In this document: positions 17,901 to 57,684 of the stretch, one piece after another
Layout: every line of letters begins with the position of its first letter
How positions within the stretch are numbered: position 1 is the stretch's first letter
NCBI RefSeq assembly: GCF_003918875.1
Contig: NW_025765431.1
Location: 1-64,000 of the forward strand
DNA length: 64,000 nucleotides
Direction of reading: 5' to 3'
Origin: Haliotis rubra
Taxonomy: Eukaryota
Notes under the pieces: generated by a model
What the model was told of the DNA's origin: nothing
Seen by the model: only the letters and a program-made list of their open reading frames with translations
Databases searched by the model: none
Program-made: the position numbers and the translations under genes

Positions 17901-18723
17901 GGGGTCACCCAGTTTGTTATAGGGAGGCAGGGAGGTATCAACACTTCAATGTGATACATCATGCGTTTGGGATTTCTGAGAATGCTCTTTTGCATGACAA
18001 CTGCATCATCAACACTTAAGTGTGATACATCATGCGTTTGGGTTTTCTGAGAATGCTCTTTTGCATGGGAACTGTATCATCAACACTTTAGTGTGATACA
18101 TCATGCGTTTGGGTTTTCTGAGAATGCTCTTTTGCATGGCAACCGCATAATCAACACTTAAGTGTGATACATCATGCGTGTGGGTTTTCTGAGAATGCTC
18201 TTTTGCATGACAACTGCATCATCAACACTTTAGTGTGATACATCATGTCTTTGGGTTTTCTGAGAATGCTCCTTTGCATGGGAACTGTGTCATCAACACT
18301 TGTTTAGACCGAGGGGAATCTGTGTTTGAAGGAAGTCCCCAGCGCCATAAGCTTGTGTTAAGAGGCGACAAAATGGATAAGACAGACAGGCTGGCATCAT
18401 ACCAAATGCCAGGATCCATGGTTAGGATGGCAATCACTGCATTGTCTGGTCCAGAATGGAATTTTCACGGACCTGGAATACGGGGTTTATCAACACACTT
18501 CAAATTAACCTGTGTCACAGCCGGTGATGAGAACATATTTGTCTGTAGGCACTGCATATTTGGCAGTTCTCCTTCCGATGACCTGATACGTGTAGTAGAC
18601 CAGGGAAAAGAATACCAGAGACATCAGCATATGTAGGGTTAGGGCTGAGTACAGCAGCAACAGGAAGGAGAGGAAGAAAGTCACCTCAAATGCCTGTGGT
18701 CCCAGTGTCTGGAGCAGGTCCAT
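11938..18723 (-). CDS. SDR1: SDR9C-type short-chain dehydrogenase (BDH1/retinol/17b-HSD-like), ~368 aa; exons 18510-18723, 17571-17771, 16619-16771, 14527-14720, 13450-13686, 11938-12045
   Basis: N-terminal hydrophobic anchor, ITGCDTGIG Rossmann motif, [19 protein letters not shown], catalytic YSMTK, LRLEMKRFGVKV. All junctions are GT-AG and in phase; the protein ends KKEA*. Confidence 0.92.
13948..14104 (+). mobile_element. tRNA-derived SINE family A (~160-170 bp), representative copy with TSD
   Basis: A/B-box head (tagcctagtgg...ggttcgaatccc), tail ggaatattgctaaaagcggcgtaaaac+microsatellite, 13-bp TSD ttgatcagagtct. Other copies near 8880, 9731, 12070, 12503, 16966, 19700, 20960, 23165, 34930, 47545, 47822, 48188, 56740, 57128, 59068, 59418, 62900. 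Confidence 0.9.
14298..14434. repeat. ~59-bp inverted repeat, Penelope-like terminal remnant
   Basis: atagacaacttc...gcaacgtttcggcgtagatgctaacaccgtta is inverted against taacggtgttaccatctacaccaaaacgttgc...gaagttgtctat. Confidence 0.6.
15364..15526 (-). mobile_element. SINE family A copy
   Basis: Full-length reverse copy flanked by the 13-bp TSD ctcatgaataact. Confidence 0.9.
15890..16380 (-). mobile_element. Mariner transposase relic in SDR1 intron 3
   Basis: Translations ILGTELGMTKVSAR and SPSSATVTKWAA.SKRGR match mariner N-terminal motifs. Confidence 0.65.
17937..18301. repeat. 71-bp minisatellite, 5 copies (SDR1 intron)
   Basis: tgtgatacatcatg recurs at 17950, 18021, 18092, 18163 and 18234. 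Confidence 0.93.
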
Positions 18724-19076: not shown

Positions 19077-21333
19077 CCTTTTGGAGAATGATGGATGCTT
19101 CAGGTAGAGCAGGACAAGCTGACCCTTCTTGCAAGCACCTGGTGTCATTACTACTTTCCCGTGATCCATTCATATAATTGCCACTGCTATTTTGTCCTTA
19201 CAGCTGTTTGTTGTTGTATTCCCATCACGAAAACAAGGATTTTTTCAGACGATAGTCAAGACTGGGTATTCTTTTCTACTGACTTTCTATATTTTGAAAC
19301 AATATATACATACTTTTATAGAATATTGTGTGACTTTCAGTACATAGACATTGTTGTCATACTTTAGTAGTGTTATGATCACGGTGTCTGTTGTTAGTAC
19401 ATAGTTATTACTTATGTGTGCGACGAAGTGACAAAATATTTTCCAGTTTTCATCACCAGCTTTGAATAGCGCTGTGGTAATGAAAACTGGGAAATAATAT
19501 AGGAACGCTTGAATATTCCGGTGATCCTTTATTGTTTTCTCTCAGTATATTTTTGCGAATTTTGTTATCGTGGATATTTTCAGATTAAATTAAAGAGTAG
19601 ATACGTGCAGGTATTTAGACACAACAGTGAGTATGTTACACACTATAGATTACAAAACTTCATATCATTATAAAATGTGTTAACATGAACTGGATTTTAA
19701 GTGAGTGAGTGAGTTTGGTTTTACGCCGCTTTTAGCAATATTCCAGCAATATCACGGCGGGAGACACCAGAAATGGATTTCACACATTGTAACCATGTGG
19801 GGAATCCAACCTGGGTCTTCGATGTGACGAGCGAACGCTTTAACCACTGGGCTACCTCACTGCTCCTGGACATCTTAACGTCTGTATAAATACAACAAAA
19901 TCATATAACTCGCAAGTCTAAATAAACTAACAAATTCGTGTTATATCTGTTTTAAAAATATAGTTAACTCCTTTGAAGTATTGATTTAGTTGACAGTATT
20001 TTTACCAAGGGTTCAGACCCTCACACCTTAACAAATATTTGTAAAGAATATGTGCCCCAAACTCCTTCAACGGCGTTATTTCATATCAACATGAGAACTA
20101 AATGCATGAAAGGAAAACATAATTCCACACGATACAAACAAGTCACATTGATCTCCCACGCTGTCCTTGACGATCAGGTTAGCGCGCCACATGAATGAGG
20201 TTTTTACGTTTGGCAAATCGCCTTTCGTCGACTCCCGGGTAGAGGTGATCATGGAACAAAACACAAGTCATCGACTGAAGTAAAGTACATAAAGGAAGTC
20301 TTACTTTGTTAGGTCTAACTAAGAAAATCACGCTTCCGAGAATGCTAGTGCATACAGGTGTTGTCAGGATACAGGTCAAGGATACAGCTGTTATCACTTT
20401 GAGGCTCTACATCTGGGGATCACTCCAAAATATTAACAATTTCAATAATAATTTACATATTATAGGACATACAATCGCACAAAAATCTATAAAATCCACG
20501 TGGTGGTATTTGTAATGGTTATTGTAATTCGGATTCGTTTTAATTGTGTTAACGAAGCATGGTCTGACTTAAGTGAGACGAGGAGACAGTCTAGATGGAA
20601 CGCACGTGTTTACTTTCCAGTGAGATTGAACCTCGACCCCTGTATCTCGCGTCACGCTCATGTGGAGATATACCCGATCGAAACAACGTAAGTAGACGTC
20701 AAATTGCACCGTGTTAATTTAATCTGGTGTTTACATAACGTACCAGCTAATGTTAAACATTTACCTTTGTCAAGTGTACGTGTGGAGTGCAAATAATGTT
20801 GTACATGTGTTTCTGTGTACGTGCTATCAACAACGTTGATCTCTATACTTTCACTGTACAGCGATCTTCATCATACTTATTACTTTACTGAACAGACACT
20901 GAAATACACGCACTGTATGTCCAGTTAAAATGACTATGTGTCGGTGTCAAGGATTAAACAGCGTGGTAGAGTTAAATCGCCCGTTAAATCGCCCGTTTGT
21001 CACGCCGAAGATCCGGGTTCGATTCCCCATGTGGATACAACATGTGGCGCTCATTTCGGCATTCCCCCCGCGGTGATACCGATGGAATATTGCGAAAAGA
21101 TGAAACTCACTCACTCATGAATTAGACATGTTGTTTCATATTTGTGGAATACATTACCATTTAGAGATGCACATTGTACTTCTTGGTTACGATAAATTAC
21201 CACAGAGCAGATCTATCAGTTGAGACGTGTGTGTCTTACATTCGCTGACACTGGCAGTATACACCATTTGCTACACTTCTATAAGTCAAACATTACTCGC
21301 CAAATCACATCGAGTTACCAGTATCTCTATTGT

Positions 21334-21575
21334 ACCCGTGAAGATCCGGGTTAGAATGGTCTTCAGCAACCCATGCTTGTCGTAAGAGGCGACTAACGGG
21401 ACCGGGTGGTCAGACTGGCTGACTTAGTTGACACATGTCATCGTATCACAATTGCGTAGATCGATGCTCATGTTGTTGATCACTGGATGGTCTGGTCCAG
21501 ACTCGATTATTTACAGACAGCCGCCATACAGCTGGAATATTGTTGAGTGCAGCGTAAAACTAAACTCACTCACTT
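21334..21575 (+). mobile_element. SINE-like family B (~245 bp), representative copy
   Basis: acccgtgaagatccggg...catgcttgtcgtaagaggcgactaacggg...gctggaatattg.tgagtgc.gcgtaaaac(ACTC)n; shares its 3' tail with family A. Other copies near 2738, 9205, 12970, 16400, 23040, 24065, 26655, 28710, 29355, 37695, 49425, 58160, 63150. Confidence 0.88.
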
Positions 21576-21752
21576 ACGCATTCAGTCAATTATGTGCAAC
21601 AGCAACAGCTCATGTATGTGTGCGTTGATCACTGGATTGTCTGGTCCAGACTCGATTATTTACAGACCGCCGCCATATAGCTGCAATATTGCAAAGTGCG
21701 GCGTAAACCTAAACTCGCTCACTCACTCACAGTGCACAATGTCTGTTTTAGA

Positions 21753-27713: not shown

Positions 27714-30700
27714 TCACGACGTAGTAGTGTAAAAGGCCTCTTTTGGCAGTGGCTGGAGCCAGAGATAAAGAGCATCCATCACCGACACCGGCAGAAAGTT
27801 GCGTAGTCGTGCCATCATCTACAAGAAATACTACAATCTGCAGTGACGTATATATAAGAGCATAAGTCGTCGATTCGTCTAACCTCAGGTGCTCAAGCAC
27901 ATATCATGGCCTCATAGATTTATAACCTGTTATCGTCGGATCACAGAATCGGAAAAGTGAACTTGAACTGTTGCACCCACTTGTTGATCTCTGTGTTGCT
28001 TTGAGTGAGTGAGTGAGTATGGTTTTTTAGCAATATTCCAGCAATATCAGGGCGGGGGATAGCAGAAATGGGCCTCATATATTGTACCCATGTGGGGAAT
28101 CAAACCCACGTCTTCGGCGTGACGAGCGAACGCCTTAACCACTAGGCTACCACACCAGCCCCCTGTGTTGCTTTGAACTGGGAAAGGGAACGGTTGCTTG
28201 CTTGCTAAATTTGCTATTTCTTGTTTAAGTTTTAGCTACAATCCAACTTCCGGGTATGGATTCTTTCTCCCCTCAACTTATAGTGTTGAGGAAATATAAC
28301 AATAAAACATTGTTAGACTTACACACAATACGTCAATCCTGTTATGAATTCCATCCACGAGGTATCGATTGTCTGGGGTTGTGCTCAGTATGGCATCCTC
28401 AAATGCATCCAGAACACCTTTTAGATCTTTGTCAGAGGATCCCCGGGATCATCTTAGGGACGCGCATATATGTATCCAAATATTGTTGTCCATACGCTGT
28501 TCGTATCTCGTCATCTACAGAGTCTAGTAACTTCTGGTACACTACCTTTTGTTGCTTAACCTGTGATGAAAGAACATAGCATTGTCAAACGAGTGAGATC
28601 GTTAGCCTAATTGGTTGAAACATATTCTGTTCTTCATAAATACATTTGATCTTTCCTTTCTCAAATTTGTAAACGGCCACTGGACAGCTGATTATATTGG
28701 TAGTGTAGTAAGTGAGTGAGTGGGTTTAGTTTTACGCCACACTCAGCAATATTCCAGCTACATGGCGGCGGTCTGTAAATAATTGAGTCTGGACCAGACA
28801 ATCCAGTGATCAACATCATGAACATCTATCTACGCAGTTGGTATACGATGACACGTGTCAACCAAGTCAGCGAGCCTGACCACCCGATCCCGTTAGTCGC
28901 CTCTTACGACATGGATGAGTTGAAGATCAATATTGTAACCGGGACCTTCACGGGTAGTAATTGAGTGGGTATGATTTTCACCATGTCTAGCCACATTCGG
29001 GGGCCATGTGGAATGGGATTCACACACTCCTATGTGGGGAACCAATCTTGGTCTATTGACATGACAACCACTTAGTGGCCCTACAATGATCGCATAGTGT
29101 GTGTATGATTGGTACACACAATTAAGCTTTGGTTGTTGGAGCTAAATAATATTTACCGTCATTCTCAATGGCTATATGAGTGTAACACAATGACACCAAT
29201 GACATGTATTCCGACTAATGGATTCCTGACACAAAGGGAGTGCTGCAGAAATCCCCGGTAAGTTTATATCTTTCGATGCACGTTTAATATTTCAAACTTC
29301 TGCTTAACACCGTTAGTTAGAAATATATTTTGCCAACCGTATAGCCCGAGATTGAGTGAGTTTAGTTTTACGACGCACTCAATATTCTATCTATATGGCG
29401 GTGGTATGTAAATAATCGAGTCTGGACCAGACAATCCAGTGATCAACAGCATGAACATCAATCTACGCAATTAGAATACGATGACATGTGTCAACCCAGT
29501 CAGCGAGCCTGACCATCCGATCCCGTTAGTCGCCTCTTACGACAAGCAAGGGTTACTGAAGATCAATATTCTAACCCGGACCTTCACGGGTATAGCCCAA
29601 GAGGTCATAATGTACGTGTCTGTACGAAGTGCATTGAGACGCCAAAATCAATCTGCGTTCAGATGCAGCTTGCAATACTACAAAGATGTTACACTTAAAA
29701 CGTTTTGGAATTGAACTCACTAGCTAGAACAAATAAAATCTTTTGTCACTTAAATGATATAATACATAAAATATATCGGGCATGAACTTTATGATTTACT
29801 ACATCACATCCACATTTCACACAGATTATTAAGCCAATCCCTATTAAAATGATGAATGCAAAATAACGTACACGTATGAAATGAATATTCATGTGTGATT
29901 CATTTAAGATAAAACCAGAATAGCACGTGAAAACGACACATTCGAATATCGATAATAATCATATGAATGTTGAATTGTTACAGTTACATGTACAAACTAG
30001 ACACTTTCACACCTATATTGGCAAATGACAGAATGTCTTATGGATCATTTACAGCACTGGTTGAGATGGTAAATATATGCGACCTCAGATAGAGTGCGAT
30101 CATTTACAGCACTGGTTGAGATGGTAAATATATGCGACCTCAGATAGAGTGCGATCATTTACAGCACTGGTTGAGATGGTAAATATATGCGACCTCAGAT
30201 AGAGTGCGATCATTTACAGCACTGGTTGAGACTGTAAATATATGCGACCTCAGATAGAGTGCGATCATTTACAGCACTTGTTGAGATGGTAAATATATGC
30301 GACCTCAGATAGAGTGCGATCATTTACAGCACTGGTTGAGATGGTAAATATATGCGACCTCAGATAGAGTGCGATCGTTTACAGCACTGGTTGAGATGGT
30401 AAATATATGCGACCTCAGATAGAGTGCGAATATGAATATTTATAACGTATCTCCGTTAAGCACAAATTGTATTGCAACGAGGGTAATGCAGATGATCATC
30501 TAATGGTAAAAAATAATTCCATCCGCATGAGATATTATTGCACGATGTGCGATACCGCCTTATGTTTATTAAACACCGAACATAAAAAAAACATATGAAC
30601 CTATTCAAAGTAATAATTTCAAACTTAAGAGTATGTGTGCATAGTTTTGAATGTCACGTCATAAATAGCGGCCCGTAGACGCTTACGTGTCTGTTAAAGT

Positions 30701-33700
30701 AACCGTTTTACAAGATACAACATGTAACAAATCGAGACCACCATTTAATATACAAATATTTACAGAAAACACTGCTATATATAATAAATATTGGAGGCGG
30801 TAAAAATAACATCACAACTATTTTGTAATAATATTGTATCGTTGATTCAACATGATATTATTGTTAATAAAGCAATATTTTTTACTGTTTTTATTGGTTT
30901 TATATAATTAATATATATGCTATTTATTCATTGTCACGTACTATTCACAACACAATATTTATTAACAGAATATGATTAATAAATCAATATTTAGTTATTT
31001 GGTCATGGTCAAAACCGTAGAGTGCGAAAAGTAATACCGGGGGGACTATATAAGTTGTAGATTATCCCTGGTAATACGTACGTTCTCCACACTAAACAAA
31101 CCAGTGCTGAGCCCATAACCGCCTGGTTCTATAAGGATGACCTTGACCCCGAATCTCCTCATCTCCAGCCTCAAACAATCTGTGAATCCTTCTGCGGCAA
31201 ACTTACTCATGACGTAAGCTGTGTGACCTTGACATGCTATCAGACCACGCACGCTGGTTACGTTGATTACGCGTCCTGAACAAAAGCAACGTTCTTAGGC
31301 CCGAAGCCGACTGAAATCCACTCGAACCCACAGCTTTTGTTTTTGCAGGTTCTTATGGACGACAGCTCTTTCATCCCCAATAACTAAGAGTATTATTTCC
31401 ATATTCAAATATAGAGCCTACACATTTTGATCAGGACCCACAACTTTGTATGGTTCTGGGTCCTTAGTGCCTGCAGCTTTTCAGAGTTAAGGGCAAACAC
31501 TGAACAAAAGGTCAAATGATTAGTCATTTATGGATATCAGCTCTTATAGATTATTTCTTTGAAATGTAATTGTCAAACAAACTGTGTTGATCCTTGCATC
31601 TGATGGCGGTTCTATCAGTATTGTAATAGTGCTTGTCATCACGTTGAAACCCTGGAACGGCTGACGCCGAATTTCCCCGTTGCAGTCAGCCGATGCCTTT
31701 GAGCTTCTGTCAGTCATGACATGTTTCAGTTTTCATTTGCTGTACAATTGTGATGGCAGACAAGTGAAAGCCCATCGTTTTCACAGACCAACAAATCATG
31801 ATGCACGTTCACTCCATGCCGGTGTGTTCGGCCGCATTCTCTGACATGGTTGCGTTTTTGCGTTCCCCACACGTTTTCGGTATATTTGTTGCTTAATTCT
31901 ACTCGCACAAATCACACCTCACGCATGCAGTCATGGGAATATCATATTTGGTATTCAATTTGTATGAATATCAGCAAAACCCATTTTACTACCTTGGCGT
32001 TTCATTATATATACACTCTGCAAATTCTAGATTCGTTCTCACAAATTCGAGTTATTTCTGCGGGATGCATAGTGTAAGTACAAAAGTGTTCCTAACCTTT
32101 TCTTTGCCTCACTAGAGGTAGAAACGTCTTGCACATTCGAACCATACCAAACAGAGGGAGACATAGTGACAAGGAATTGTTTGGTATGGCCGCGTGTAAT
32201 AACCGTCGTATTTACGTCAATATTTATTCTTAAATTCAATTCATATCAGTATGTAAACAATATATAAAAGCATATTTTTCTCACCTTTTCTTTGCCTCAC
32301 AAGAGGTAGAAACGCCTTGCACATTCGAACCATACCAAAGAGATTTACTTCTGCAACTCTCCTGTAGATATCCATTGTCTGTATCTCCACATCCCCTGTG
32401 TATTGTATGCCAGCATTGTTTACCAAGGCCCATAATCCTGAAAGGTAACATTACACTTCATAAGTAAAGATTTTAATCAGTATTGACATGTTAAAGAAGA
32501 TAGACAGTTTAAATTATGGCCTTACAACTGGTACAATTTTGTATCGTTGTCTATATTTTCTGCATTATCCACTGAGTGTTATTTACTTGGGCCAATAGTT
32601 TCAATCATAACATATCCATAGATTTAGACCTTGCTTTCTAATAATATAGCGAGATTTGGCTGTGCTTGTACTTGACCGGAATTATGCCGGTGCCAATATA
32701 AATACAATCTCGCAGCCCGGTCCGTATATTTTCACCCCAGGCAGGGTCACAAGCTTTTAAGTGCCATTATTCATCGTTATGTGATAGTACGTGGCCAGAA
32801 GATCCACCACACCAGGAAGGTGGTCAACCACACAGTGTTGTGTGACGGTCTTTTCTTGTGTAAGATCGTTCCAATTGTGTAATACTGTAACTTCTGCCGA
32901 CAGTCACTGAGTGTACTGTATATTGAGACTTGTGCTATGTGTAGACAGAGATCTGGAAGCTACTACAAGGTGCTACGATTTTATGAGCCTTTATATTTTG
33001 ACCCAAGGAGTTGGAGAATCTTCTGTAGTCGTGTTCTTATATATATAATGGAAGCTACTTATTTCCTTTCATCTAACATGATATACATCTGTACAGTAAC
33101 CAGGAGACCTGTAATTTTGTGGAGATCAGCCTTACCCTGGAAACAGGGTCTATATTGGAAACTTGACCATCGTTCCAATGAAGAGAATATTACATCTCTG
33201 TCTCTACTACTATAAACATTGCTTTTATATTTTATACTGCCCTTGAACTTGCACAGCCACTGTGATACATATGTCGAGATTTGTATTAATCTTTATCATA
33301 TCACATTGTTTTGTTGTTTGTTGGTTCCCCACTGAGTTTTTGTCCTTACTGATTTTTCAGTTAACTCCCCCATTAGTCTTTACTTGGGAATCAAAAAGTG
33401 ACTGAAGTAATCTAAAGATACCCCAATGTACCTTCTTTGTTACATAGCGTCTTCACCCTCTGAAGACATGAAGCAACACTTTCATCCGAAGTTACGTCTA
33501 GCTGTAAAACACACATGCGCCTGCTCCCTGTTGTCTTCAATTGTTTGGCACCGTCACTTTCCTCAGAGAGACACGCGGCGATGACGTTCAGTCCCTTGGT
33601 GTCCAGTAGTCTAGCGAGGCTATTCCCGAAGCCTGTGTATGGCAAAAGTCTATATGTTTGGCTTACAACAGGAACTTATGATTTGGGGTCAATGTCTTGT

Positions 33701-34250
33701 GTACCAATATTGCTGAATTATTATAATTTACCCTCTCTCTACCCGACAACATATCACATAAAGATAGTCAGTAAAGATACAGTCATACATTTTCTTTGTT
33801 TCCATGTATTCAATTCGAGTAACCACACACATGCCAATCTTCTCTTCGTGTGTTTGGGCAAATCCTTGACATTAGCCCTGACCTTGTAAGCTTTGGTAAG
33901 CAAATACAATTTAATACAGAACTGAAAGAAACATAAGGTTATTAGACTATTTCTTCTAATAAACACTTTTAGGCGTAAATATACATGTAATATCTAAAAT
34001 CGTACTATGTGTCAAAGAGACGTGGAGACTTACCTGTGTCACACCCTGTAATAAGAACATATTTCCCTTGTGTGTCGACCATCTTTGTGCCTGCTTTGCG
34101 TATAAACCAGTAACTAACAGAACACGCAAGACAGAGTAGACAAAGGTTGAGCACCTGTCCCCATAATGTGACAAATACCAGTACTACAAATAACACGCCT
34201 AAACTGGTCTCGAAGACACACAAACCAAGCATGTCCACCAAACTAGACAT
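27714..34250 (-). CDS. SDR3: SDR9C-type dehydrogenase with a +1 frameshift in exon 5; exons 34034-34250, 33432-33632, 32285-32437, 31082-31275, 28323-28560, 27714-27818
   Basis: ITGCDTGFG, LVNNAG and YVMSK are intact. Exon 5 is 238 nt (237 in SDR1/2), giving an in-frame TGA at 28432-28434; the conserved sequence continues in the +1 frame. Confidence 0.88.
28004..28162 (-). mobile_element. SINE family A copy
   Basis: Reverse copy flanked by the 14-bp TSD ctgtgttgctttga. Confidence 0.88.
30043..30427. repeat. 55-bp minisatellite, 7 copies (SDR3 intron 4)
   Basis: gatcatttacagcactggttgagatggtaaatatatgcgacctcagatagagtgc repeated almost perfectly. Confidence 0.95.
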
Positions 34251-36812
34251 AATCTACAAGAGAGAACAGACTTCCCATTCCACACATAAGTACCGGCACA
34301 TTTGCCAAAATAGGCTACACGAATTGTCTGCTGAAACGGCACCTGTTCATACTGCAATAGTTCTGTGACGCCTCTATGGCCTACTTCTTTTTTATCTCTT
34401 AAATTGCGTGATCTATTTGCTCACCTGAGGTCTTACCGTGATTGAATTTGGAGCAAATGTGATTTCTTCGAACACTCCAAGAACTGTGTGCACTCTAAAT
34501 CGAGGTACATGAATTTCATGTCTCTTTGTAAACAAAAAAAGAAGTGAAACGCCAATGTTGTGCCCGATATCATCACACATGATAAATACTACTTAGATAT
34601 TATGTAACAGTAATCGAAAACACAATGAGAATGCTATGTTTTGTCGTGAACCACGCAATCTTACACCATGACGAGGACGTCACGCTATTGTTGTTACAGT
34701 TGATTCTCAGCCAGGTCGTGGTGGTTTCAGTCGAAAAGACCATGGTTAAACCGAACCTTTCCTTCAGAGAAATCACTCAAATGTAATGCTTTCGGAAGGA
34801 GTGTCAATTCAAAGAACCAAGAGTTTGATAGGTTCTCCATTGCATAATTTGATATAAGACCGCCGTGGGAATCATATTTGAAATTCCATTGTGCTCGTGT
34901 CATTTCCTCATTTACTGTTGTAAAATTAAGTGAGTGAGTGAGTATGGATTTAGCAATATTCCAGCAATAACACGGCGGGGTACACCAGAACTGGGCTTCA
35001 CACATTGTACCTATGTAGGGAATCGAACGTGGGCCTTCGGCGTGACGAGCTAAAGCTTGAACCACTAGGCTACCTCACCGCCCCTGTAAAATTAAGAGAG
35101 TCTTCTAGAACAGCTACAACTGGGATGGGATGGTGCATCAACGAATACACCAAAAGAACTTTAATTGCACTAACACATACTAGCAATCAATCCTGTTAGA
35201 ACATTGGCTGCCTCTGAATCATAAGAAGTGTGTCAATCTTTGAATCGGTTAGTAGTGCAATAGTGTACATTACCGTAAAGCCTGCATCTTACTTGGAGAA
35301 TGAACCACATGTGAAGTATCCAGCAAACATATAAAATCATCTTTTGTTTTAAGACACTTGTGCTCGATCTTTTCCAGGTGGACAAGCTCCCTCGCATCGG
35401 CACTGATGTCAAGCTTTATAAACAAGGCAATTGATAGCTCCCCATCTTTTCCAATATTTTGGCACATTCACTCTGTGAACATATTCATCTTAAAAAACCC
35501 CATTCATTTACAATGACGCTGATGGGTGAAGATTTTTGTGTTGGCGTCGCTCGAAATGCAGGAATGTTGATCGATATTTTGTCTCTGAACACCGTAAACA
35601 CTGATACGTGTGTTTCTATAAGGCCTCTACAGACTGCGGGCATTTTCAGAAATTAAATATTGTGAATAAGGCAGAATGAAGGAAATGAATAATTTATAGT
35701 ATTACTCTTTTGTACCGATAACGTTACTTCAAGTACTGTGACCTGCGCTGAGTTGTAGATTGCCTAGGTCTGCAACAGTACAATCTGCATCATATCGTCC
35801 TGGAAATATTCGAGAAAACTAGATACCACCCACACGGCTAGTGGCCCTAGAGGTTGTGTGTCGAGTTGTCCCATAAGCCGAGCATGTGACATATCAGTAC
35901 ACACTGTAGTCCATGTCCTCAAAAAGCCGCGGCTGAAAAGAAACTTTGAATAGCCGTATCCCCGCTTGGGACAGCTCTCTACTGTTGCTTTTGGAATGTG
36001 CTGCGTGTCAACACTGTGTGTCATAAGTGTACGCTTACAAAAAGCCTGTTTGACGCATGAATCTAGATGTTACACCCAATGTGGGCAAATGCAATATTTG
36101 CTCGTTTCATGCAATGGACAGGTAATTGTTCTGCCCGATGCACGCAATCGGAAATTTGTATTGTTTTACATGTCTGTTTTTTGTATTAATCAAACGCTAT
36201 TATTAAATGAATTAACTGTAATTGATAACCACCAATCAGAAATGTGATCTCAAGAAAGTTTATTTTCTAACTAAAACACATATCAAGAAAAGTGTTACGA
36301 ACACGGTAGACATAAAGGGTCAATATGTAGACCGTCCCTATGTCCTCAGCCTCCTAGTCCTCCAGTTGTCTAAATGAGGATGATCCTCCTGTGTCTCCTA
36401 GTTGATCGTGCGGCATCACCACCAACGACGTTGATCATTGCTCATTCTGACTAGTACTGGCTATCAGTATACAGTATAAGGCCCAGATACAAGAATCTAG
36501 AGCTGGGGATCAAACCTGCATGTATCACCAACGTTATTCAATAGTAATCATGACACAGACACTAACGTATATCTTCTCAGTGACGTACGCTCGTACGTCA
36601 GCAGCTTATCCAGTTAGTCAAAAAGAAACGTAATAATAAAGACACGATACTTTATCGATGATAAAGTATCATATTATGATGAGACGTTTTGAAATAAGTT
36701 CTTATACCGTTGTCAAGCAAGAGCGAATTGTCATATCTTCAGCAAACCAACTGCAGTTTACTACTTAAACCGTCAACTAACATTGCATTGACCGGGTTAA
36801 TAACGCCTCACT

Positions 36813-39800
36813 TCACGACGTAGTTGTGTAAAAGGCCTCTTTTGGCAGTGGCTGGAGCCAGAGATAAAGAGCATCCATCACCGACACCGGCAGAAAGTTG
36901 CGTAGTCGTGCCATCATCTACAAGAAATACTACAAGCTACACTGACGTATATATATGGCGTTAGTTATAACCGTGGCTCAACTAAACCAGTTTCTAATGT
37001 GTTTATGCTATTATGAATGTGTGGTTTATCTCTTGAAGCATTCACTAAAGCTGTCACGATGTCAGTCCATCTTTCTCCTTACCTTTACTATGACGCTGAT
37101 ACGGCTTGATATATCATCGGATCCTCATACTCCAAAGGACTACAACTAACCTAAAGATGATGCTATTGAGGCGAAAAGGCCACCCATGGCTCCATTTGCC
37201 TTGTGACTGGGGTAAAAAGGGATTGCTTACCTGCAAGTGCAGCCATGTTTGCAGTAAACAAGTTTGGGAAAAAGTAGTTTCAAGACGAAGTTGTATGTCT
37301 AAGAACGGTGACCATGTAACAGGGTGTTACTTACGCACAATACGTCAATTCTGTTACGAATGCCATCGACGAGGTATCGATTGTCTGGGGTTGTGCTCAG
37401 TATGGCATCCTCAAATGCATCCAGAACACCTTTAAGATCTTTGTCAGAGGATCCCCGGGTTCATCTTAGGGACGCGCATATATGTGTCTAAATATTGTTG
37501 TCCATACCCTGCCCGTATCTCGTCATCTACAGAGTCTATTAGCTGTTGGTACGCCTTCTTTTGGCGCTGAACCTGTGATTATAAATAAAATGTATCTTGA
37601 TCTCACCCAACCTAAACGCCTCTGTGTTAAGGTACATGTACTGTATGTAATACTGGGTGCAGCTCATGAGACAATGCACCAGAACCTATACCTGTTGGTT
37701 TGGTTGGTTGGTTGTTTAACGCTGCACAAGGCAATATTCCACCTGTGTGGCGGTAATCTGTAAATAGTAGAGTCTGGACCAGACAATCCAGTGATCAACA
37801 GCATGAGCATCGATTGCTGAAGACCAATTCTAACCCGGATATTTACGGGTGTCCTCTACCTGTATGTACTTGCTGCTATTAACGCAAAGTCTGTGAATGC
37901 AAGATGATGTCACGTATGAACTGACATACCTAATAACAAGGAAGATACACACTGAACACTTCTGACATTCAAAACATCAATTTTTAACGGGTATGAATGC
38001 ATAGTTGTCAAAGAGGCGTCCTTCATTGCTGCATGTATACGTTATGTGAACAATTGTCGGACACACGTAACAAATAGAAATATAAAACACAATTTATCAT
38101 CAGAAAAATATTGGAATATTGTAGTCTTAGCGGCTGTACCAAATACATGCACTTTTTAATACGTTTTGTAAAAGATTATATCTTTAACGGAACGTGTTTT
38201 ATACAATTTCATTTAATTAATGTTTACTTAATTGGTCATGATTAAAACCATACTGTACACACTCCATATGTAAAACTTTAAGCAATACGTACGTTCTCCA
38301 CACTAAATAAGCCAGTGCTTTGGCCAAAACTTCCTGGTTGTACAAGGATGACCTTGACTCCGAACCTCCTCATCTCCAGCCTCAAACAATCTGTGAATCC
38401 TTCTCCAGCAAACTTACTCATGACGTAAGCTGAGTGACCTGGGCCCGCCAGCAGACCACGCACACTGGTCACGTTGATAACACGTCCTGAACAAAAGGTC
38501 ACAATATTGGTCATTTATGGAGATAAAAATCTGTCACTCCTCACAGGGAGACATGGTGACATGGAGTTGTGTGGAATGGCCTGGTGTAATGACCGTAGTA
38601 TTTATGTCACTATTACTTCAAAACTGTGATTCAACTCAGTATAGAAATAATATATAAAATCATATTTTCTCACCTTTTCTTTGCCTGACTAGAGGTAGAA
38701 ACGCCTTGCACATTCGAACCATACCAAAGAGATTTACTTCTGCAACTCTCCTATATATAGTCATTGTCTGTATCTCCACATCCCCTGTGTATAGTATGCC
38801 AGCATTGTTTACCAAGGCCCATAATCCTGAAACATAAAACCTGTATCAATATTACAGTTAGGTATACAATTTGATACATTGTGTATATTAGCTCAAAACT
38901 GGTATAACTTTAAATAATTGTCTGCAAAGTTTGCATTAACCATTTATAGATTGTAAGTTAATTATGTTGTTTTACTGAGTGACCTTTCGGTACACATAGT
39001 GGTTAACCAGGGGTAAGTGGGTTAGTTTGTCCCGCTCAAGACTCATGTTTGATTCCCCACAGGAGGAGCGTGTTCAGTTACAAGTGTCCCTTCAGGTGTG
39101 CCTTGAATACTGCTGAAAGCAGCGATAAACCACATCCACATCTAAATAGCTATTCATTGTCAGGAACCATCAAGATGATATTTTGACACAATGTACATAC
39201 ACATGAACAACGCCAATGAAATTAAGCTCAGGTCATTGTCAAGGTCTGAAATTGTCTGAAGCATGTATCAACAAAGAAAACGTTTAATCATGTTTTGCAA
39301 AATGGTGTATAATGTTCAGTCATACGTCAGCAATATGTGTTTTCAAAAGCCATTGATTTGAGGTATTTGGTTGTTAATTTGGCTCGGTACTTTATTAATA
39401 AATTATCCCTATGCTTTGAGGTAGTCAGTAGCATATTAACATATCAAATGTATTTAAGACACCCCAATGTACCTTCTTTGTTACATAGCGTCTTTACCCT
39501 CTGAAGACATGAAGCAACACTTTCATCCGAAGTTACGTCAAGCTGTAAGACACTCATGCGCCTGCTCCCTGTTGTCTTCAATTGTTTGGCACCGTCACTT
39601 TCCTCAGACAGACACGCGGCGATGACGTTCAGTCCCTTGGTGTCCAGTAGTCTAGCGAGGCTATTCCCGAAGCCTGTGTATGGCAAAAGTCTATATGTTT
39701 GGCTTACAACAGGAACTTATGATTTGGGGCCAATATCTTGTGTACCAATATTATTGAATTATTACATGCTACCCGTTTCCTACCCTACAACTACGTTTGG

Positions 39801-41075
39801 CTTAAAAACAATAACGTTTTGGACTCAATACACATAGTTTTATATACGAGGAGTGTTCAAGAAGTTTCCGGCCTTATCATGAAAAATACGATATGTATGA
39901 ATATCTTTCTACCTATGTTTCAACATAGTCATCCTTGACTTCTGTACACTTGATCCAATATTTCTCCAACATTTGTAACCCATCCGAAAACCACAGTTTG
40001 TCACGTGACCCTAAAATGTCCTCCATGGCAGTAATAATGTGTTCATGTGTCTTAAATGTGCTGCCTCGGAAAAAGCGGAAAGAGGAAACAGTCAGAGAGC
40101 GCTAGATCTGGAGAATAACCTGGACGTAGGGGGTGAATGAAAGCAAGGAAGGTAACTCCGCCAGTAGTTATTCTAGTGGACAGGTGATTCAAGAAGTATA
40201 TTTAGAGTTAACTCACCCGTCCCTTCACTCGGCTGAACAGGAAGCTGACAGGGGTAATGAAGACGAAGAACGATTTGATATGCCAAGAATGGCGCTTAAA
40301 ATGTTTAATGAAATATATTCACGTGAGTAATTATTAAATATGAGGTTGGAAATGTGTGTCTACCTTTGATATTTTATTTTGATATTAAAAATATTTTTCG
40401 AACTGAAGCGAGGGAAGTACGTTTCCAACCTATTGGCGCTACAGCTTGCCTGTGAATCAGCACAGCACTGATTTACTGTACTATATGAAGGGCAAGTATC
40501 ACCTAATGTTTGTGGCATGTCTTCATGAATGTGCTTGAGAGTATATACTTTTTTAAAATTTTGAGCAGCTGTTGAGAGTAAATGGAAAGGAAGTGAAGCT
40601 TGACAGGAGTATATATGCAGTTCTAGTTTGTGCAATTCAAGCTATTCATGTTACCGTCATGCTTTAATCCTGATCTATATACACAGGCAGTTTGGTTGTG
40701 TCTGGGAGATCCGTTCATTGTCAGGCCGGAAACATCTGGGACATCATTAGTAAATCACTGAATCACACGGTCCTGCTGTTACATTAGGTCTTCCAAACAC
40801 TGTTTTAATACACAGTCTAAACTTATACCTGTTTTTTTTAAGAGACGTGAAGACTTACCTGTGTCACACCCTGTAATAAGAACGTATTTCCCTTGTGTGT
40901 CGACCATCTTTGTGCCTGCTTTGCGTATAAACCAGTAACTGACAGAAAATGCACCACAGAGTAGACAAAGGTTGAGCACATGTCCCCATAATGTGACAAA
41001 TACCAGTACTACAAATAACACGCATAAAATGGTCACAGATACCACTGGACCAAGCATGTCCACCAAACTATGCAT
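36813..41075 (-). CDS. SDR4: SDR9C-type dehydrogenase, close paralog of SDR3 with the same +1 frameshift; exons 40859-41075, 39473-39673, 38674-38826, 38293-38486, 37335-37572, 36813-36917
   Basis: Same motifs as SDR3; exon 5 is 238 nt with an in-frame TGA at 37444-37446. Confidence 0.88.
39847..40750 (-). mobile_element. Degenerate mariner element in SDR4 intron 1
   Basis: TA-flanked imperfect TIRs sharing GTTTCCGGCCT; internal [19 protein letters not shown] resembles a mariner transposase N-terminus. Confidence 0.75.
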
Positions 41076-41904
41076 GGTCTACTTCGGAGAACTGCCTTCC
41101 CTTTCTCCACTATAAGAATCCTGTGTTGCGGCAACTGTCGTAAGGTTATTGCAACTGGGCTAATTCAGCGATAGGCGCACTGTAGTGACACATTGAATAC
41201 TGCAACAGTTCTGTTAAGCCCCTGTGACCTAATTCGTGTTATCTCGGCAAACTGCTTGATCTACTTTCAGCTCCCCTAAATCCAGGGTTACAAAGACCTT
41301 ATGCCTTGGCACGTTGTTCGAACCTTCGTTCGTCCGACTGTTACAACACCTGAATGAACAACACTTTCTCAGGAATTTATACCATATCATGAGCTGTGTG
41401 ATGTGGTCACAGGTTACTAATCTATTTAAGGATATTGTTCGGACAGCTCAGTTGAAAACTGCAATTTTCATATAAGAACAGCAAAGTTTAATTTATTGCG
41501 AATATGAGTTCCTGTAACAATGCTGATATCACAATTTCGAAAACTTCTTCTGGAAACCTAAAGGGTAGTGACACAGGAGTGTAACATCCATGGCAACCGC
41601 CATAGCGCGTATAATTAATGACGGTAAGTAAACTGAATTCCAAAAGAAACGTGGATATTACAATTGTTTGAAAGTATTTGAAATGAAACATGTTGAGGCA
41701 AAGTGGTATGTGTTCGATGTTCAGATAGGCATTCTGGTCACTGTTCTGATGATACCGAAGTGACTGCTGATGGAGGCCATATTCGACACTGAAATGTTCT
41801 TTCCCATGACCCATAAGTGACGTTACCAAATGACGATGTCATACTGACAACATCAAGACACAGTTCTGGTTATAAATATGATGTGGTAGTGTGTGGCCTT
41901 GTGC

Positions 41905-42251
41905 ATTGTGCTCAGGTCACAAATCAGTTGAAGTTAAGCAACGCTGGGCGCGGAGAGTTATTGCATGGGTGACCGTGTTTGGCAGCTTGACTCCTGAGAG
42001 TTTCTAGGATTTTAGTCCTGCCCGACATGTGATACATATAGTCTCACCTAAGGCAAGTGAGTTTGTTCAAAATTGCCTCTGTTTACCCAGCAGAACATGG
42101 GTACTTGGCGGGATATGATATGTGGCTATTAACCTTCTAGCGCCTCACAAACAGCTTGGGTTATCTGGGGTAATAATGATCTGATTGTGCGCTTTGAGCA
42201 GGATGTGAAGCCTGGAAAGGCGCGTTATAAATATTCACCATTATTTATTAT
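41905..42251 (+). mobile_element. 5S rRNA-derived SINE (5S head, Deu/Nin-like core, L2-like tail); duplicate at ~50812-51158
   Basis: gaagttaagcaacgctgggcgcgg...tgcatgggtgaccg (41930-41975) resembles the 5S internal control region; then ctctgtttacccagcagaacatgggtac; tail gcgctttgag...ggcgcgttataaat...tttattatt. Confidence 0.72.
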
Positions 42252-42521
42252 TTCAAAAGCAAACATCAATATCTTCATTCATCACTGTATCAAAGCTTTA
42301 CTTTATTCGCGTTCGTTTGGATTCGAGTATATATATATTTCCTCGAGAAGCCTACGCATGTATAATTATGTCATTGAGACATTTACAGTAGCAATAACAA
42401 CTATTAGTCACTTTTGTTAAGTTCACGTTACGGATAAACGATCACTCGTGAAGATATCCAGCTGCACATTTCCCCAGCCATCGTGTTGATGTGTCGGTCA
42501 CTTCGACGCCGTGTATATATA

Positions 42522-43493
42522 CTAGCCACATAAAGAAACTGTGCATTATCAAAATATTATCCCAGTTGATAAGTACGATAACAATGTCAAAGGTACATAT
42601 AAACTTTAATGGAGGGATCATGAGACCATAACAAGTCGGGATAATTTCAATTGAAAAGTCAATCACAATGACGTCACGAGTCCACAAGCGGGACAGGGGT
42701 CAAATGACCATGTCACAAGCTCAATAACGGGTATATCCACCATCGGCATTGAGAACAGCAGTGCATCGACGATGCAGAGAGCCTATCAAACGTGCATGGA
42801 AAGCTTGTGGGATGTCACGCCAGATTCTCGCAAGTTCTGTTGCAAGGCCAAGGATGTTATCTGACGTCGTGGTCTGATCCCGTGATGACGTAAACGTTGT
42901 CGAACTGTGTTGGGGTGGATACGGCGAAGTCCTGGGATGGTTCGGGCAGTCATCACTGCAGTCTGAAACCTGTGGCGAAGGTGGGTCACCCTTATCCATC
43001 TGTCCTGTCTTGGCGTTGTTACACGTGGACGTCCAGAACGTGGCCGATCGATGACGTCATTTGTGTTCTGATAGCGTCTCACCAGTGCAGAAATGGTGTT
43101 CCGGTGGCAGTGGAAATGTGCAGCCACTTGTCGTTGAGACATTCCCCCACGGACCATCCCAATGGCCTCATGACGTTGTGCAGTCGTGAGCCTTGGCATG
43201 CTATGCGTTTCAATAGCCGTTTAATTTTTTGAACGATTGCAAGGGCAGGGGTTGAGCTTTCCAAAGTGACGGAATTGTGGCGCATTCATTTGCTCTGTTT
43301 CTCTTTCCCGGAATGCACATGCAACAACGTACTGCACGTCTCAAGGACGAACCCACTGACGTCATGGAACGTGGCACGTGCATGCATGTTGGATACATGT
43401 CAATAATCTCTGAATTTAAATCCTTATGTGTCTACACAGGTTTGATAAATTTACATTTTAAATTTTTGTATGCACAGTTTCTTTTAGGCCTAG
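42522..43493 (-). mobile_element. Tc1-family internal-deletion derivative with TIRs and TA target duplication
   Basis: TA|CTAGCCACATAAAGAAACTGTGCAT ... ATGCACAGTTTCTTTTAGGCCTAG|TA. ORF 42786-43199 encodes the HTH DNA-binding region (GRPRVTT) joined out of frame to the C-terminal ...GGYTRY; the DDE core is deleted. Confidence 0.92.
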
Positions 43494-43633
43494 TATATTT
43501 GAAAGAAACTTAAAACAGGACGAGGCCACCCACACATGAAAAATGGATTCGGAAAATGATAAAATACCTTTATTAAGCACTCCTGAGCATTAACTAAATT
43601 CATTTACAAATGTTTATTTGCACGTCAGCTTCT

Positions 43634-46484
43634 TCAATGCCTAGAAGTTGTACTTGCATAGAAAGCTTCTTTTGGCAATGGACGCAGGTAGAAATACAAT
43701 GGATCCATAATAAATACAGGCAGGACATTTCTGAGGCGAGCCATCGTCTGAAAGGTTAAGACAAGTTTGGATCATGTACATGCATGTGGAAAGATATTAA
43801 GAAGCATTAAAGGCAAATACAACAAGAAATTATACCGGAGGTTCAGTACGTTTTCCAAATGATGTTTAAATACCAGAATATATTTCACAGATTTAGTTTT
43901 TACATGGTTGATGAGCAATCAAATTTGTCCATATTGAACATATACTTCATACACATTGTTCTTCACTCACACAGTCGCCGTCCACCCTCTGCCCATCAAC
44001 AAGGTAGCGACTGTCTGGCCGGCAGCTAAGTATGGCATCTTCAAAGGCATCAAGCATTGGTTGGATGTCCTGGTCGGAAGACCCTGGGCGCATTTTTGGC
44101 ACCCGCATGTATGTGTCCAGATAGTCTTGCCCATACGCTGTCCTTATTTCATCGCTGACATTATCGATCAGCTTCTTGCTCAAAACTTTGTATCGTTCAA
44201 CCTGTTTGGGGGGTGAATAAAATGCGAACATATAACTAGTTATCAACATAAACACATAAAGATATTAGCATGCATTTACCTGATGAAGGGGCAAGAAGTA
44301 GCCCAGAAACGGCGTGTTGTAAATAATGAAGAAGTTGTAAATCAACACCGCACGTTGTTATGTTACTCTTAAATGCCCATCAAACATGTATTGTTTGAAA
44401 GAATTCATGCCAAATCAAACTATATAGGAAGCGTAAACACCAGAGAATAACCATTCTCGAATTTCTGCCAATTCCATTTGACGTTATTGGCAAATTGGAG
44501 AGGGGGAAAATGATAGGAATAGATAACAACAGGTGTTCAATAAAGATATGGAACATATTCTATTGTAAATACATAGCATAGCAAAGAACCAACAACCGTA
44601 CGTTTTCTTCATTGAATAAACCAGTGTTGAGCCCAAACATTCCGGGTTCCACGTGAATGACCTTGACTCCAAACCTCCTCATCTCTAGCCTAAGACAGTC
44701 GGTAAAACCCTCAAGACCAAATTTACTCATGACATAGCCGGAATCCCCACAGAAGGCTTGTAATCCTCGGACGCTTGTGACGTTAATAACTCTGCCTAAA
44801 ACACAAACGTCATATGTTGGTAATCATTAATATGTGACTATCTGCATATCAATGGGCATTTTCAAAGAATAAATAAAATAAATCTTCAAAGTTGCTCTCA
44901 TATCCACAACTGAAAACAAGCAAACGTAGCTCACCTTTACATTTTCTAACAACTGACAGAAAGACTTTACACATTCGTACAGCCCAAAATATGTTGACGT
45001 CTGCAGTTCAAGCAAACGTAGCTCACCTTTACATTTTCTGACAAGGGGCAGAAAGGCTTTACACATTCGTACAACCCCAAATAAGTTAACTTCTGCAATT
45101 CTCTTATACGCTTCCATGGTCTGTATCTCCACATCGCCTTTGCAGATTATCCCAGCATTGTTTACCAAGGTCCACAAACCTGAAAAAAGAAACACAGCAT
45201 CACAATGACTAAAACGGTAATATTTTATTTGTCCTCTTCAAAATGTTCATATCAAAGGTTTGGATGTGAACGACCAAATGCGTGGTGTACCAGATTATCA
45301 TTTGGTGTCGAATGTAACAATTCGGCCAATATGCGAGGCAAAGTGGTTGGAACAAAAGTGATACATTCTTTTATGTACTGAATTGTTACAAAGAAAATGT
45401 TACAAACTTTGTAAACCAATTCAGCCATGGTATAATAGTAATGTACGTTTCGATGAAGGTTGCGTTTTTGTTATTCATGTGCGTGCTGCAAAAAGCTAGA
45501 TATGCCATAATCCAAAACGACGCGAACATTTCAATTCATCTACAATGATGTCTTCGAATTCATCCCAGAAATGCCCTAATGTACCTTCTTTAAAACATAT
45601 GGGCTTGATCTGTTCAAGGCAGGCAAGAACGCTCGCATCCGAACTGACATCCAGCTGTAAAACACGCATATTCTTGCTTCCATCTTTCTTCAATAGTTTT
45701 GCTCCTTCACTTTGTTCAGAAAGGCATGTAGCAAATACCTTTAAACCTTTGCTATCAAGGAGTCGAGCAAGACTATTTCCAAAACCTGAATCGAGAAAAC
45801 GTTCATGTAAAATCTCTATGCAATGACGCTGATAGATTACTTTGTACGTGCTCAGCTTCGGTGACTACGCCGACACACCATGTAACAAACGATCAAGCTC
45901 ATACAGTATAGATAAGATTAAATTGGAAGATATATTTTCACTGTCAGCACTTTGTTCATCTTCCTCTCTTTTAGAGTCTTGGTCATCGCTCTCACGTTTA
46001 TTAATTGTCATCACTCTCACGTTTATTAATTGTCATCACTCTCAAATCATTAATTGCCATCAGTCACAATTGTGTTTATTTGGCCATCATTCTTACGTTT
46101 ATTAATCGTTATCACTTTCACATATTTACCTGTCATCACTCTGACATTTTTATCATGTCGTTTAATCGGCTTCAGTCTCTTATGTTCATGAATGGTCATC
46201 ACGTTTAGAAGCTTATTCACAGTTATAATCCTATCGTTATGTGAGGTCGTTACAAACTAAACCTTACCTGTGTCACAACCTGTAATGAGTACATATTTCC
46301 CTTGTGCATCAATCCTTCTTGCTCTTGCTCTTCGAATTAGCCAGTAGCATACAAAAATGCCTCCGGTAAGAAGAAAACTAGCAATAGTCAGTCCACATGG
46401 TGACACGTACATCAGAAAAAGGGCTAACACACAGAAAAGCAGCTCGGTGGCGCCGAGACCAACCCTTTCAACACAGCGAGTCAT
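43634..46484 (-). CDS. SDR5: SDR9C-type dehydrogenase, intact; exons 46268-46484, 45585-45785, 45027-45179, 44602-44795, 43971-44201, 43634-43747
   Basis: ITGCDTGFG, LWTLVNNAG, NVTSVRG, YVMSK; in-phase GT-AG junctions; AATAAA on the minus strand near 43570. Confidence 0.92.
44274..44324 (+). ncRNA. Hammerhead-ribozyme-like motif, probably degenerate (duplicate at 53180-53230)
   Basis: ATTTAC-CTGATGA-A-GGGGC aagaagta GCCCA-GAAA-C ggcgt G-TT-GTAAAT: core boxes plus a 6-bp stem I and a 4-bp stem II; the stem II closing pair is mismatched. Confidence 0.45.
45980..46210. repeat. Degenerate ~25-bp tandem repeat in SDR5 intron 1 (copy at ~54890-55115)
   Basis: Recurrent gtcatcactctcacgtttattaatt variants. 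Confidence 0.7.
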
Positions 46485-52400: not shown

Positions 52401-52540
52401 TATATTTGAAAGAAACTTAAAACAGGACGAGGCCACCCACACATGAAAAATGGATTCGGAAAATGATAAAATACCTTTATTAAGCACTCCTGAGCATTAA
52501 CTAAATTCATTTACAAATGTTTATTTGCACGTCAGCTTCT

Positions 52541-57647: not shown

Positions 57648-57649
<2 letters not shown>

Positions 57650-57682
<33 letters not shown>
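57650..57682. repeat. (AT)n microsatellite
   Basis: About 16 AT units; only about 4 at the paralogous site near 48713. Confidence 0.9.

Positions 57683-57684
<2 letters not shown>

What the first reader, a model, noticed from the sequence alone, without database searches (positions are those of the whole stretch)
28323..37572. Identical +1 frameshift with a 'shifty-stop'-like context (CUC UGA C) in two SDR paralogs whose downstream frame is still conserved
Seen: SDR3 reads ATG ATC CCG GGG ATC CTC TGA CAA (stop 28432-28434) and SDR4 reads ATG AAC CCG GGG ATC CTC TGA CAA (stop 37444-37446). Both exons are 238 nt versus 237 nt in SDR1/2. Skipping one base restores [28 protein letters not shown], collinear with SDR5 [28 protein letters not shown]. 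After the stop, SDR3 and SDR4 differ in the +1 frame by CTA/CTT, GTG/GTC, GGA/GGC, AGG/AGA, TGT/TGC and ACT/ACA (exon 6), all synonymous, and by a single replacement (CAT/CGT); splice sites are intact. A lesion inherited from a dead ancestor should not show this pattern. Known: +1 programmed frameshifting at a codon-UGA junction occurs in antizyme (UCC UGA) and bacterial RF2 (CUU UGA C). Inference: either regulated +1 recoding giving 297-aa and ~368-aa products, which I do not know of in this family, or one extra G called in the same context in both genes. The artefact explanation is at least as likely: deleting one G gives PGSSD exactly as in SDR5, the site is a homopolymer beside a CpG, and indels occur elsewhere in this assembly. 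A recent real mutation copied between paralogs by gene conversion is a third option.
Basis: partly seen in the sequence, partly recalled or inferred. Interest (0 to 1): 0.72.

Follow-up and report, generated by a model that had tools for sequence, protein, structure and literature searches.

The report
Likely assembly-error frameshift in SDR paralogs
Two neighbouring dehydrogenase genes look broken by the same extra base in this assembly, but independent sequencing runs and a related species carry the unbroken version, so this is most likely a consensus error and not a new case of ribosomal frameshifting.

Summary
SDR3 exon 5 (28323-28560) and SDR4 exon 5 (37335-37572), both on the minus strand, are 238 nt long. 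Both read ...PGIL then UGA, and the conserved C-terminal frame continues one base further on.

The extra base does not hold up outside this assembly. Contigs of three public DNA runs (three samples, two studies) were laid on SDR4, and each lacks one C of the CCCC run at 37453-37456. It is the only form seen in two runs. In the run closest to the assembly, three contigs carry it. One of these contigs is anchored in SDR4's own intron.

A related genome holds the SDR4 ortholog with a 237-nt exon 5. It has no G4 run and no stop, and exon 6 keeps the same reading frame.

The downstream frame is under strong purifying selection (dN/dS 0.05 between the paralogs, 0.09 against the ortholog). No RNA element that stimulates frameshifting was found.

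Best reading: a context-specific consensus error (about 0.7). A real, non-fixed null allele copied by gene conversion is the main rival (about 0.25). Recoding is about 0.02.

SDR3's own site could not be read separately. Earlier notes of this scan report similar homopolymer frameshifts, judged to be assembly errors, elsewhere in this genome.

The parts
37453..37456 (-). SDR4 frameshift site: CCCC on the plus strand (GGGG in the gene's sense), beside a CpG
   Evidence: One letter is left out here in contigs of X1 (3 contigs), X5 (the only contig) and X3 (the only contig, placed at 37455).
28441..28444 (-). SDR3 frameshift site, same 10-letter context as in SDR4
   Evidence: SDR3-type contigs were co-laid on the SDR4 exons.
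37444..37446 (-). In-frame UGA of SDR4 as assembled (context CUC UGA C)
28432..28434 (-). In-frame UGA of SDR3 as assembled
37335..37572 (-). SDR4 exon 5, 238 nt as assembled; 237 nt in the other runs and in the ortholog
28323..28560 (-). SDR3 exon 5, 238 nt as assembled
36813..36917 (-). SDR4 exon 6 coding part (34 codons plus stop), reached only in the shifted frame
   Evidence: The same open frame and the same stop are kept in ortholog L001.
27714..27818 (-). SDR3 exon 6 coding part; 1 synonymous difference from SDR4
38293..41075 (-). SDR4 exons 1-4: 40859-41075, 39473-39673, 38674-38826, 38293-38486. They hold the N-terminal membrane anchor, the glycine-rich NAD(P) motif, NNAG and Y-x-x-x-K.
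   Evidence: Pfam adh_short matches exons 2-4. Best solved relative is DHRS9.
31082..34250 (-). SDR3 exons 1-4: 34034-34250, 33432-33632, 32285-32437, 31082-31275
43971..44201 (-). SDR5 exon 5, 231 nt, in frame, P-G-S-S-D. Its twin SDR6 lies at 52878-53108.

Best explanation
SDR3 and SDR4 are intact, selected genes for membrane-anchored short-chain dehydrogenases of about 368 residues. They belong to a tandem array of six. Their true exon 5 is 237 nt and reads P-G-S-S-D. The fourth C/G at 28441-28444 and 37453-37456 is a consensus error of this assembly. It was made twice because both genes carry the same letters there: a short G/C run beside a CpG. Short-read correction is also weakest where two paralogs are nearly identical. 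Shown: the three-C form exists in every run that covers the site, and the ortholog is in frame. Inferred: that the assembled individual itself has three Cs in both genes, and the way the error arose.
For: -: one letter is left out at 37453-37456 in X1 (3 contigs, 327.7 of 506.8 summed depth), X5 (the only contig) and X3 (the only contig). These are 3 samples from 2 studies.
- X5's contig spans 37329-37681, so it is anchored in SDR4's own intron.
- In X1, the three-C depth is about twice the single-copy depth of the flanking contigs (134-167). That is enough for both genes. The tool warns that depth is a weak measure.
- every alternative letter inside the exons equals SDR3's letter. So SDR3 contigs were laid too, and no third close paralog shows up.
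- One search also shows the assembly disagreeing with the runs elsewhere. At 40884 the assembly has G where all contigs of all four runs have A. At 39269 the only X1 contig has T where the assembly has C.
- the SDR4 ortholog (L001, L002) has a 237-nt exon 5 with no stop.
- dN/dS downstream is 0.05 between the paralogs and 0.09 against the ortholog. There is no other lesion in either gene.
- (leads only): other pieces of this genome have homopolymer frameshifts that were judged to be assembly errors.
Against: - In X1, the run most like the assembly, about a third of the summed depth at the site (179 of 507) carries no counted deletion. A four-C form may therefore really exist in that individual. 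The tool also says that some differences in X1 were not counted.
- All runs are Logan contigs, not raw reads. They drop rare variants and hide which paralog a contig belongs to.
- SDR3's site was never read on its own.
- X5's depth is low (5.8).
- A run of four is short for a homopolymer error.
Confidence: 0.7

Rival explanations
1. A real but non-fixed null allele. A one-base insertion arose recently in one of the two genes and was copied to the other by gene conversion. The assembled haplotype carries it in both genes, while other haplotypes and individuals keep the intact 237-nt exon. The products would be truncated at 297 residues, or the transcripts removed by nonsense-mediated decay.
For: Gene conversion in exactly this 3' part is evident. 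Exon 6 differs by 1 of 105 letters between SDR3 and SDR4 but by 13-14 from the SDR4 ortholog, whose intron flanks clearly pair with SDR4. The second half of exon 5 differs by 6 between the paralogs against 12 from the ortholog. Some X1 depth at the site shows no counted deletion. In a six-gene array, loss of a copy is tolerable.
Against: In X1 the three-C form has about two copies' worth of depth. The flanking introns show one haplotype only, with no alternative letters. That fits a homozygous region poorly if both genes were heterozygous for the indel. The assembly is wrong at other single positions nearby.
Confidence: 0.25
2. Programmed +1 ribosomal frameshifting at CUC UGA C (or at GGG A), giving both a 297-residue and a 368-residue product from a gene that truly has four Cs.
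For: A stop codon in the A site directly after the shift window resembles antizyme (UCC UGA) and RF2 (CUU UGA C); this is established knowledge. The downstream frame is strongly constrained. Both paralogs carry identical lesions.
Against: The shift is absent from the contigs of three runs. It is absent from the ortholog, which also lacks the stop and the G run; programmed sites are normally conserved. There is no Rfam frameshift element. The 100 nt after the UGA fold no better than shuffles (z = 0.06 and -0.26). A leucine tRNA on CUC cannot re-pair well on UCU (inference).
Confidence: 0.02
3. Both are old pseudogenes that inherited the lesion from a dead common ancestor.
For: The lesion is identical in both copies.
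Against: Neither gene has any other lesion, and all splice sites are intact. Downstream dN/dS is 0.05. The ortholog that split off after the duplication is in frame. Intact alleles exist.
Confidence: 0.01

Closest known systems
Single-base consensus indels of long-read or hybrid genome assemblies, which break reading frames at short homopolymers and methylated CpG contexts (own knowledge, e.g. Watson and Warr 2019; not looked up here)
   Same: One extra base in a G/C run beside a CpG. The identical context gives the identical error in two genes. Independent short-read contigs lack it. Other single-letter disagreements between assembly and runs lie nearby.
   Different: The run is only four long. 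The sequencing platform of this assembly is not known to me. A four-C form in the assembled individual is not excluded.
Antizyme (UCC UGA) and bacterial RF2 (CUU UGA C) programmed +1 frameshifting
   Same: In the assembled letters, a sense codon is followed by UGA and the conserved frame continues one base on.
   Different: The site is not fixed in the species and not conserved in the ortholog. No stimulatory structure or Rfam element was found, and the P-site codon does not allow re-pairing.
SDR9C-type short-chain dehydrogenases (DHRS9, retinol dehydrogenase and 17-beta-HSD6-like enzymes)
   Same: adh_short matches on exons 2-4, with the glycine-rich motif, NNAG and Y-x-x-x-K. There is an N-terminal hydrophobic anchor. 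The best solved relative is DHRS9. A weak collinear match of exon 5 to DHRS9 residues 232-283 runs across the site.
   Different: Substrate unknown. The lineage-specific tandem array of six has a longer C-terminal tail encoded by exon 6.
Concerted evolution (gene conversion) of tandem paralogs
   Same: Identity between SDR3 and SDR4 is patchy. Differences per exon are 21/217, 5/201, 7/153, 25/194, 23/238 and 1/105. The 3' part is closer between the paralogs than to the ortholog.
   Different: Here it matters only as a possible way to copy a real lesion. It is not needed if the extra base is an error.

Membership tests
Programmed +1 ribosomal frameshift site | The frame break is a fixed feature of the gene in all individuals | tested here: not met
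   Contigs of X1, X5 and X3 lack one C at 37453-37456. It is the only form in X5 and X3.
Programmed +1 ribosomal frameshift site | The shift site and the stop are conserved in orthologs | tested here: not met
   Orthologs L001 and L002 read in frame, with no G4 run and no stop, in a 237-nt exon.
Programmed +1 ribosomal frameshift site | A slow A-site codon after a P-site codon whose tRNA can re-pair or occlude one base | tested here: inconclusive
   UGA is present as assembled. Re-pairing from CUC to UCU is poor; GGG-A could re-pair but has no slow A-site codon. This is inference from the letters.
Programmed +1 ribosomal frameshift site | A stimulatory RNA element near the site | tested here: not met
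   No Rfam match other than a tRNA-like repeat. The downstream folds have z = 0.06 and -0.26.
Programmed +1 ribosomal frameshift site | A trans-frame protein product or ribosome density past the stop | not testable with these tools
   No RNA run was offered. No profiling or proteomics data were on hand.
Short-chain dehydrogenase/reductase (classical SDR, SDR9C-like) | Match to the adh_short profile across the Rossmann core | tested here: met
   Exons 3 and 4 pass Pfam's cut-off on their own (33.5 and 47.0 bits against 26.6). Exon 2 scores 23.3 bits, below the cut-off but collinear.
Short-chain dehydrogenase/reductase (classical SDR, SDR9C-like) | Glycine-rich cofactor motif, NNAG, catalytic Ser and Y-x-x-x-K | tested here: met
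   Seen directly in the exon translations of both genes: ITGCDTG-FG across the exon 1/2 junction, LVNNAG in exon 3, VTS and Y-V-M-S-K in exon 4.
Short-chain dehydrogenase/reductase (classical SDR, SDR9C-like) | Closest solved relative is an SDR9C member | tested here: met
   DHRS9 (9b2f) is the best match for exon 4, E = 2.8e-09.
Unitary or processed pseudogene | Relaxed constraint and further lesions | tested here: not met
   dN/dS is 0.30 upstream and 0.05 downstream. There is no other stop or shift, and the borders are GT-AG.

The most novel reading that the evidence does not exclude
The four-C form is real on the assembled haplotype in both genes, having been copied by gene conversion, and a fraction of ribosomes shifts +1 at CUC UGA C. 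The allele would then yield both a truncated and a full-length dehydrogenase. This would be the first +1 recoding in the SDR family and in a mollusc gene other than antizyme.
Probability: 0.02. Interest if true: 0.7.

Novelty: not a real feature. Interest (0 to 1): 0.07.

Why it matters
If the recoding reading were true, it would add a rare eukaryotic +1 frameshift. The evidence instead says the frame break is not a property of the gene. The practical value is a warning. In this assembly, identical single-base frame breaks in paralogs can come from context-specific consensus errors, so 'the same lesion twice plus a conserved downstream frame' is not evidence for recoding here. Gene annotation of this array should use a 237-nt exon 5 and products of about 368 residues. 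The patchy gene conversion between SDR3 and SDR4 is a minor but real feature of the locus.

Tried and rejected
It was redone with coordinates only.
- Looking up plus-strand ORFs that span or adjoin the sites, to fetch independent contigs of the four-C form, found nothing on record.
- The word search with the 53-residue shifted-frame piece gave a single candidate. So no SDR3 ortholog fragment and no ORFs from the laid runs could be obtained.
- A paper search for the accession numbers of the ortholog's contigs gave only irrelevant hits.
- No run on record as RNA held the stretch, so expression, splicing and the transcript's letters at the site could not be examined.
- Depth arithmetic on X1 (three-C about 2 copies, the rest about 1) was considered. 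It is kept only as a weak argument, because contig depths are per-contig means, overlapping contigs are counted twice, and the tool says some X1 differences were not counted.
- An alternative internal intron or splice site that would restore the frame was considered and dropped. It would delete conserved residues and is not needed.
- The costly all-against-all protein search was not used, because the family is clear from Pfam and PDB.
Exons were searched one by one by reference. Across-exon sums of synonymous and replacement changes were made by adding in-frame exon pieces inside scripts.
Full report
**What is in the window.**
The window holds a tandem array of six paralogous genes with the same six-exon plan:
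- SDR1, about 13.4-17.8 kb, minus strand.
- SDR2, 21.7-25.5 kb, plus strand.
- SDR3, 27.7-34.25 kb, minus strand.
- SDR4, 36.8-41.1 kb, minus strand.
- SDR5, 43.6-46.5 kb, and SDR6, 52.5-55.4 kb, both minus strand.

Exons 2-4 match Pfam adh_short. The cofactor motif, NNAG and Y-x-x-x-K are all present. The best solved relative is DHRS9. Exon 1 encodes a hydrophobic N-terminal anchor. These are SDR9C-like membrane dehydrogenases. Earlier notes of this scan say the genome is an abalone; I did not test that.

SDR3 and SDR4 have identical exon lengths (217/201/153/194/238/105) and GT-AG borders. Exon 5 starts in phase 0, reads 42 codons and meets UGA at 28432-28434 and 37444-37446. The family's conserved C-terminal sequence continues one base further on, to the donor site and through exon 6. 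The plus strand reads GATCCCCGGG at both sites. SDR5 and SDR6 have one base fewer there and read P-G-S-S-D. Every other paralog's exon 5 that could be measured is a multiple of three: 237 nt in SDR2 and 231 nt in SDR5/6.

**Constraint.**
Nei-Gojobori counts between SDR3 and SDR4 are:
- Upstream of the site: 35.3 synonymous and 39.7 replacement changes (dN/dS 0.30).
- Downstream, in the shifted frame: 6 synonymous and 1 replacement (dN/dS 0.05, binomial P = 0.001).

So the last 73 residues have been translated in that frame for most of the genes' history. This rules out an old inherited lesion. It does not by itself call for recoding.

**Independent DNA.**
The run search listed 11 runs that hold the stretch or part of it, all kept as contigs and none on record as RNA. 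I laid four of them on the whole SDR4 gene at 90% likeness, so that SDR3 contigs would be laid too. X9 has no contig over exon 5. Results at the run:

| Run | Sample, study | Result at 37453-37456 |
|---|---|---|
| X1 | S1, P1; no differences from the assembly across 3 kb of introns | one letter left out in 3 contigs, 327.7 of 506.8 summed depth |
| X5 | S3, P1 | one letter left out in the only contig; it spans 37329-37681 and so includes SDR4's own intron |
| X3 | S2, P2 | one letter left out in the only contig, depth 70.4 |

Every alternative letter reported inside the exons equals SDR3's letter at the matching place. This shows that SDR3 contigs were indeed laid, and it gives no sign of a third close paralog.

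In X1 the three-C depth is about twice the single-copy depth of the flanking contigs (134-167). The remaining 179 has no counted deletion, but the tool states that some X1 differences were not counted and that contig depth is a poor measure.

The same call shows the assembly disagreeing with the runs at other single positions. At 40884 the assembly has G where all contigs of all four runs have A; this is a CpG in SDR4 exon 1. At 39269 the only X1 contig has T where the assembly has C.

**Ortholog.**
A word search with the 53-residue shifted-frame piece found one protein, P0001. It is a 90-residue ORF that runs through the site in a single frame. It lies on a Logan contig (L001) and on a contig of another NCBI assembly (L002).

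The intron flanks pair it with SDR4: 12/55 and 13/49 differences, against 32/55 and 21/49 for SDR3. Its exon 5 is 237 nt and reads N-S-G-S-S-D, with no G4 run and no stop. Exon 6 keeps the same frame and the same stop. SDR4 against this ortholog, downstream of the site plus exon 6, gives 18 synonymous and 7 replacement changes (dN/dS 0.09). A programmed shift site would be expected to be conserved here, and it is not.

**Gene conversion.**
Exon 6 differs by 1 letter between SDR3 and SDR4 but by 13-14 from the ortholog. The second half of exon 5 differs by 6 between the paralogs against 12 from the ortholog. Differences per exon are patchy: 21, 5, 7, 25, 23 and 1. So the 3' parts of SDR3 and SDR4 were homogenised after the split from the ortholog's lineage. 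This keeps alive the rival in which a real recent insertion was copied from one gene to the other.

**Recoding signals.**
No Rfam family matched other than a tRNA-like repeat. The 100 nt after the UGA fold no better than shuffled sequence (z = 0.06 and -0.26). CUC offers no good +1 re-pairing; that is inference.

**Verdict.**
The frame break is not a fixed property of these genes.
- Most likely (0.7), it is a consensus error made twice in an identical G/C-run-plus-CpG context, in a stretch where the two paralogs are 95% alike.
- A real, non-fixed null allele on the assembled haplotype is the main rival (0.25).
- Programmed +1 frameshifting is very unlikely (0.02).
- An old pseudogene pair is excluded.

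**Limits.**
- All read evidence comes from contigs, not raw reads.
- SDR3's own site was not read separately.
- No RNA data were available.
- Earlier notes of this scan report homopolymer frameshifts judged to be assembly errors in other pieces of this genome, including breaks in genes expected to be essential. I used them as leads only.

Exons were searched one by one by reference.

Noticed in passing
window 40884 and 39269: The assembly disagrees with the public runs at single letters. At 40884 it has G where all contigs of all four runs have A; this is a CpG and a synonymous TAC/TAT in SDR4 exon 1. At 39269 it has C where the only X1 contig has T.
   Followed up: partly
window 32098-32160, 44936-45004, 53842-53910: A second copy of the 3' half of exon 3 (the ...FG-VRMCK-FLP-VR... 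part) lies in frame about 25-125 nt downstream of exon 3, in intron 3 of SDR3, SDR5 and SDR6. It is absent from SDR4. It may be an alternative exon end or a relic duplication.
   Followed up: no
window 41267-49061 vs 50171-58022: An 8-kb direct duplication at 96.5% identity carries SDR5 and SDR6. The identity is close to the allelic divergence seen between individuals. It could therefore be a true young tandem duplicate or two haplotypes placed side by side.
   Followed up: no
window 33633-33750 vs 39674-39791: The last ~90-120 nt of intron 1 plus exon 2 are about 94-97% identical between SDR3 and SDR4, while most other intron sequence is unalignable. This is probably a gene-conversion tract, possibly a conserved intronic element.
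   Followed up: no
window 28001-28162 and more than 20 other places (e.g. 9732-9893, 13948-14098, 15373-15528): A dispersed repeat of about 150-160 nt occurs in both orientations. It has a near-threshold Rfam tRNA match at 28092-28149 (28.5 bits against 29). It is probably a tRNA-derived SINE. A second repeat of about 240 nt (e.g. 9209-9446, 21333-21577, 28712-28956) is also abundant.
   Followed up: no
window 30043-30429 and 17937-18301: Tandem arrays with periods of about 55 nt and about 71 nt lie inside SDR3 intron 4 and near SDR1.
   Followed up: no
window 37443-37456 and 28431-28444: From memory, unverified: in the four-C form, the 14 letters from the CCC of the proline codon through CTCT equal a stretch of the pUC18/19 polylinker (SmaI-BamHI). 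The three-C form does not match it. About a handful of such matches are expected by chance in a genome of this size, so I take it as coincidence.
   Followed up: no
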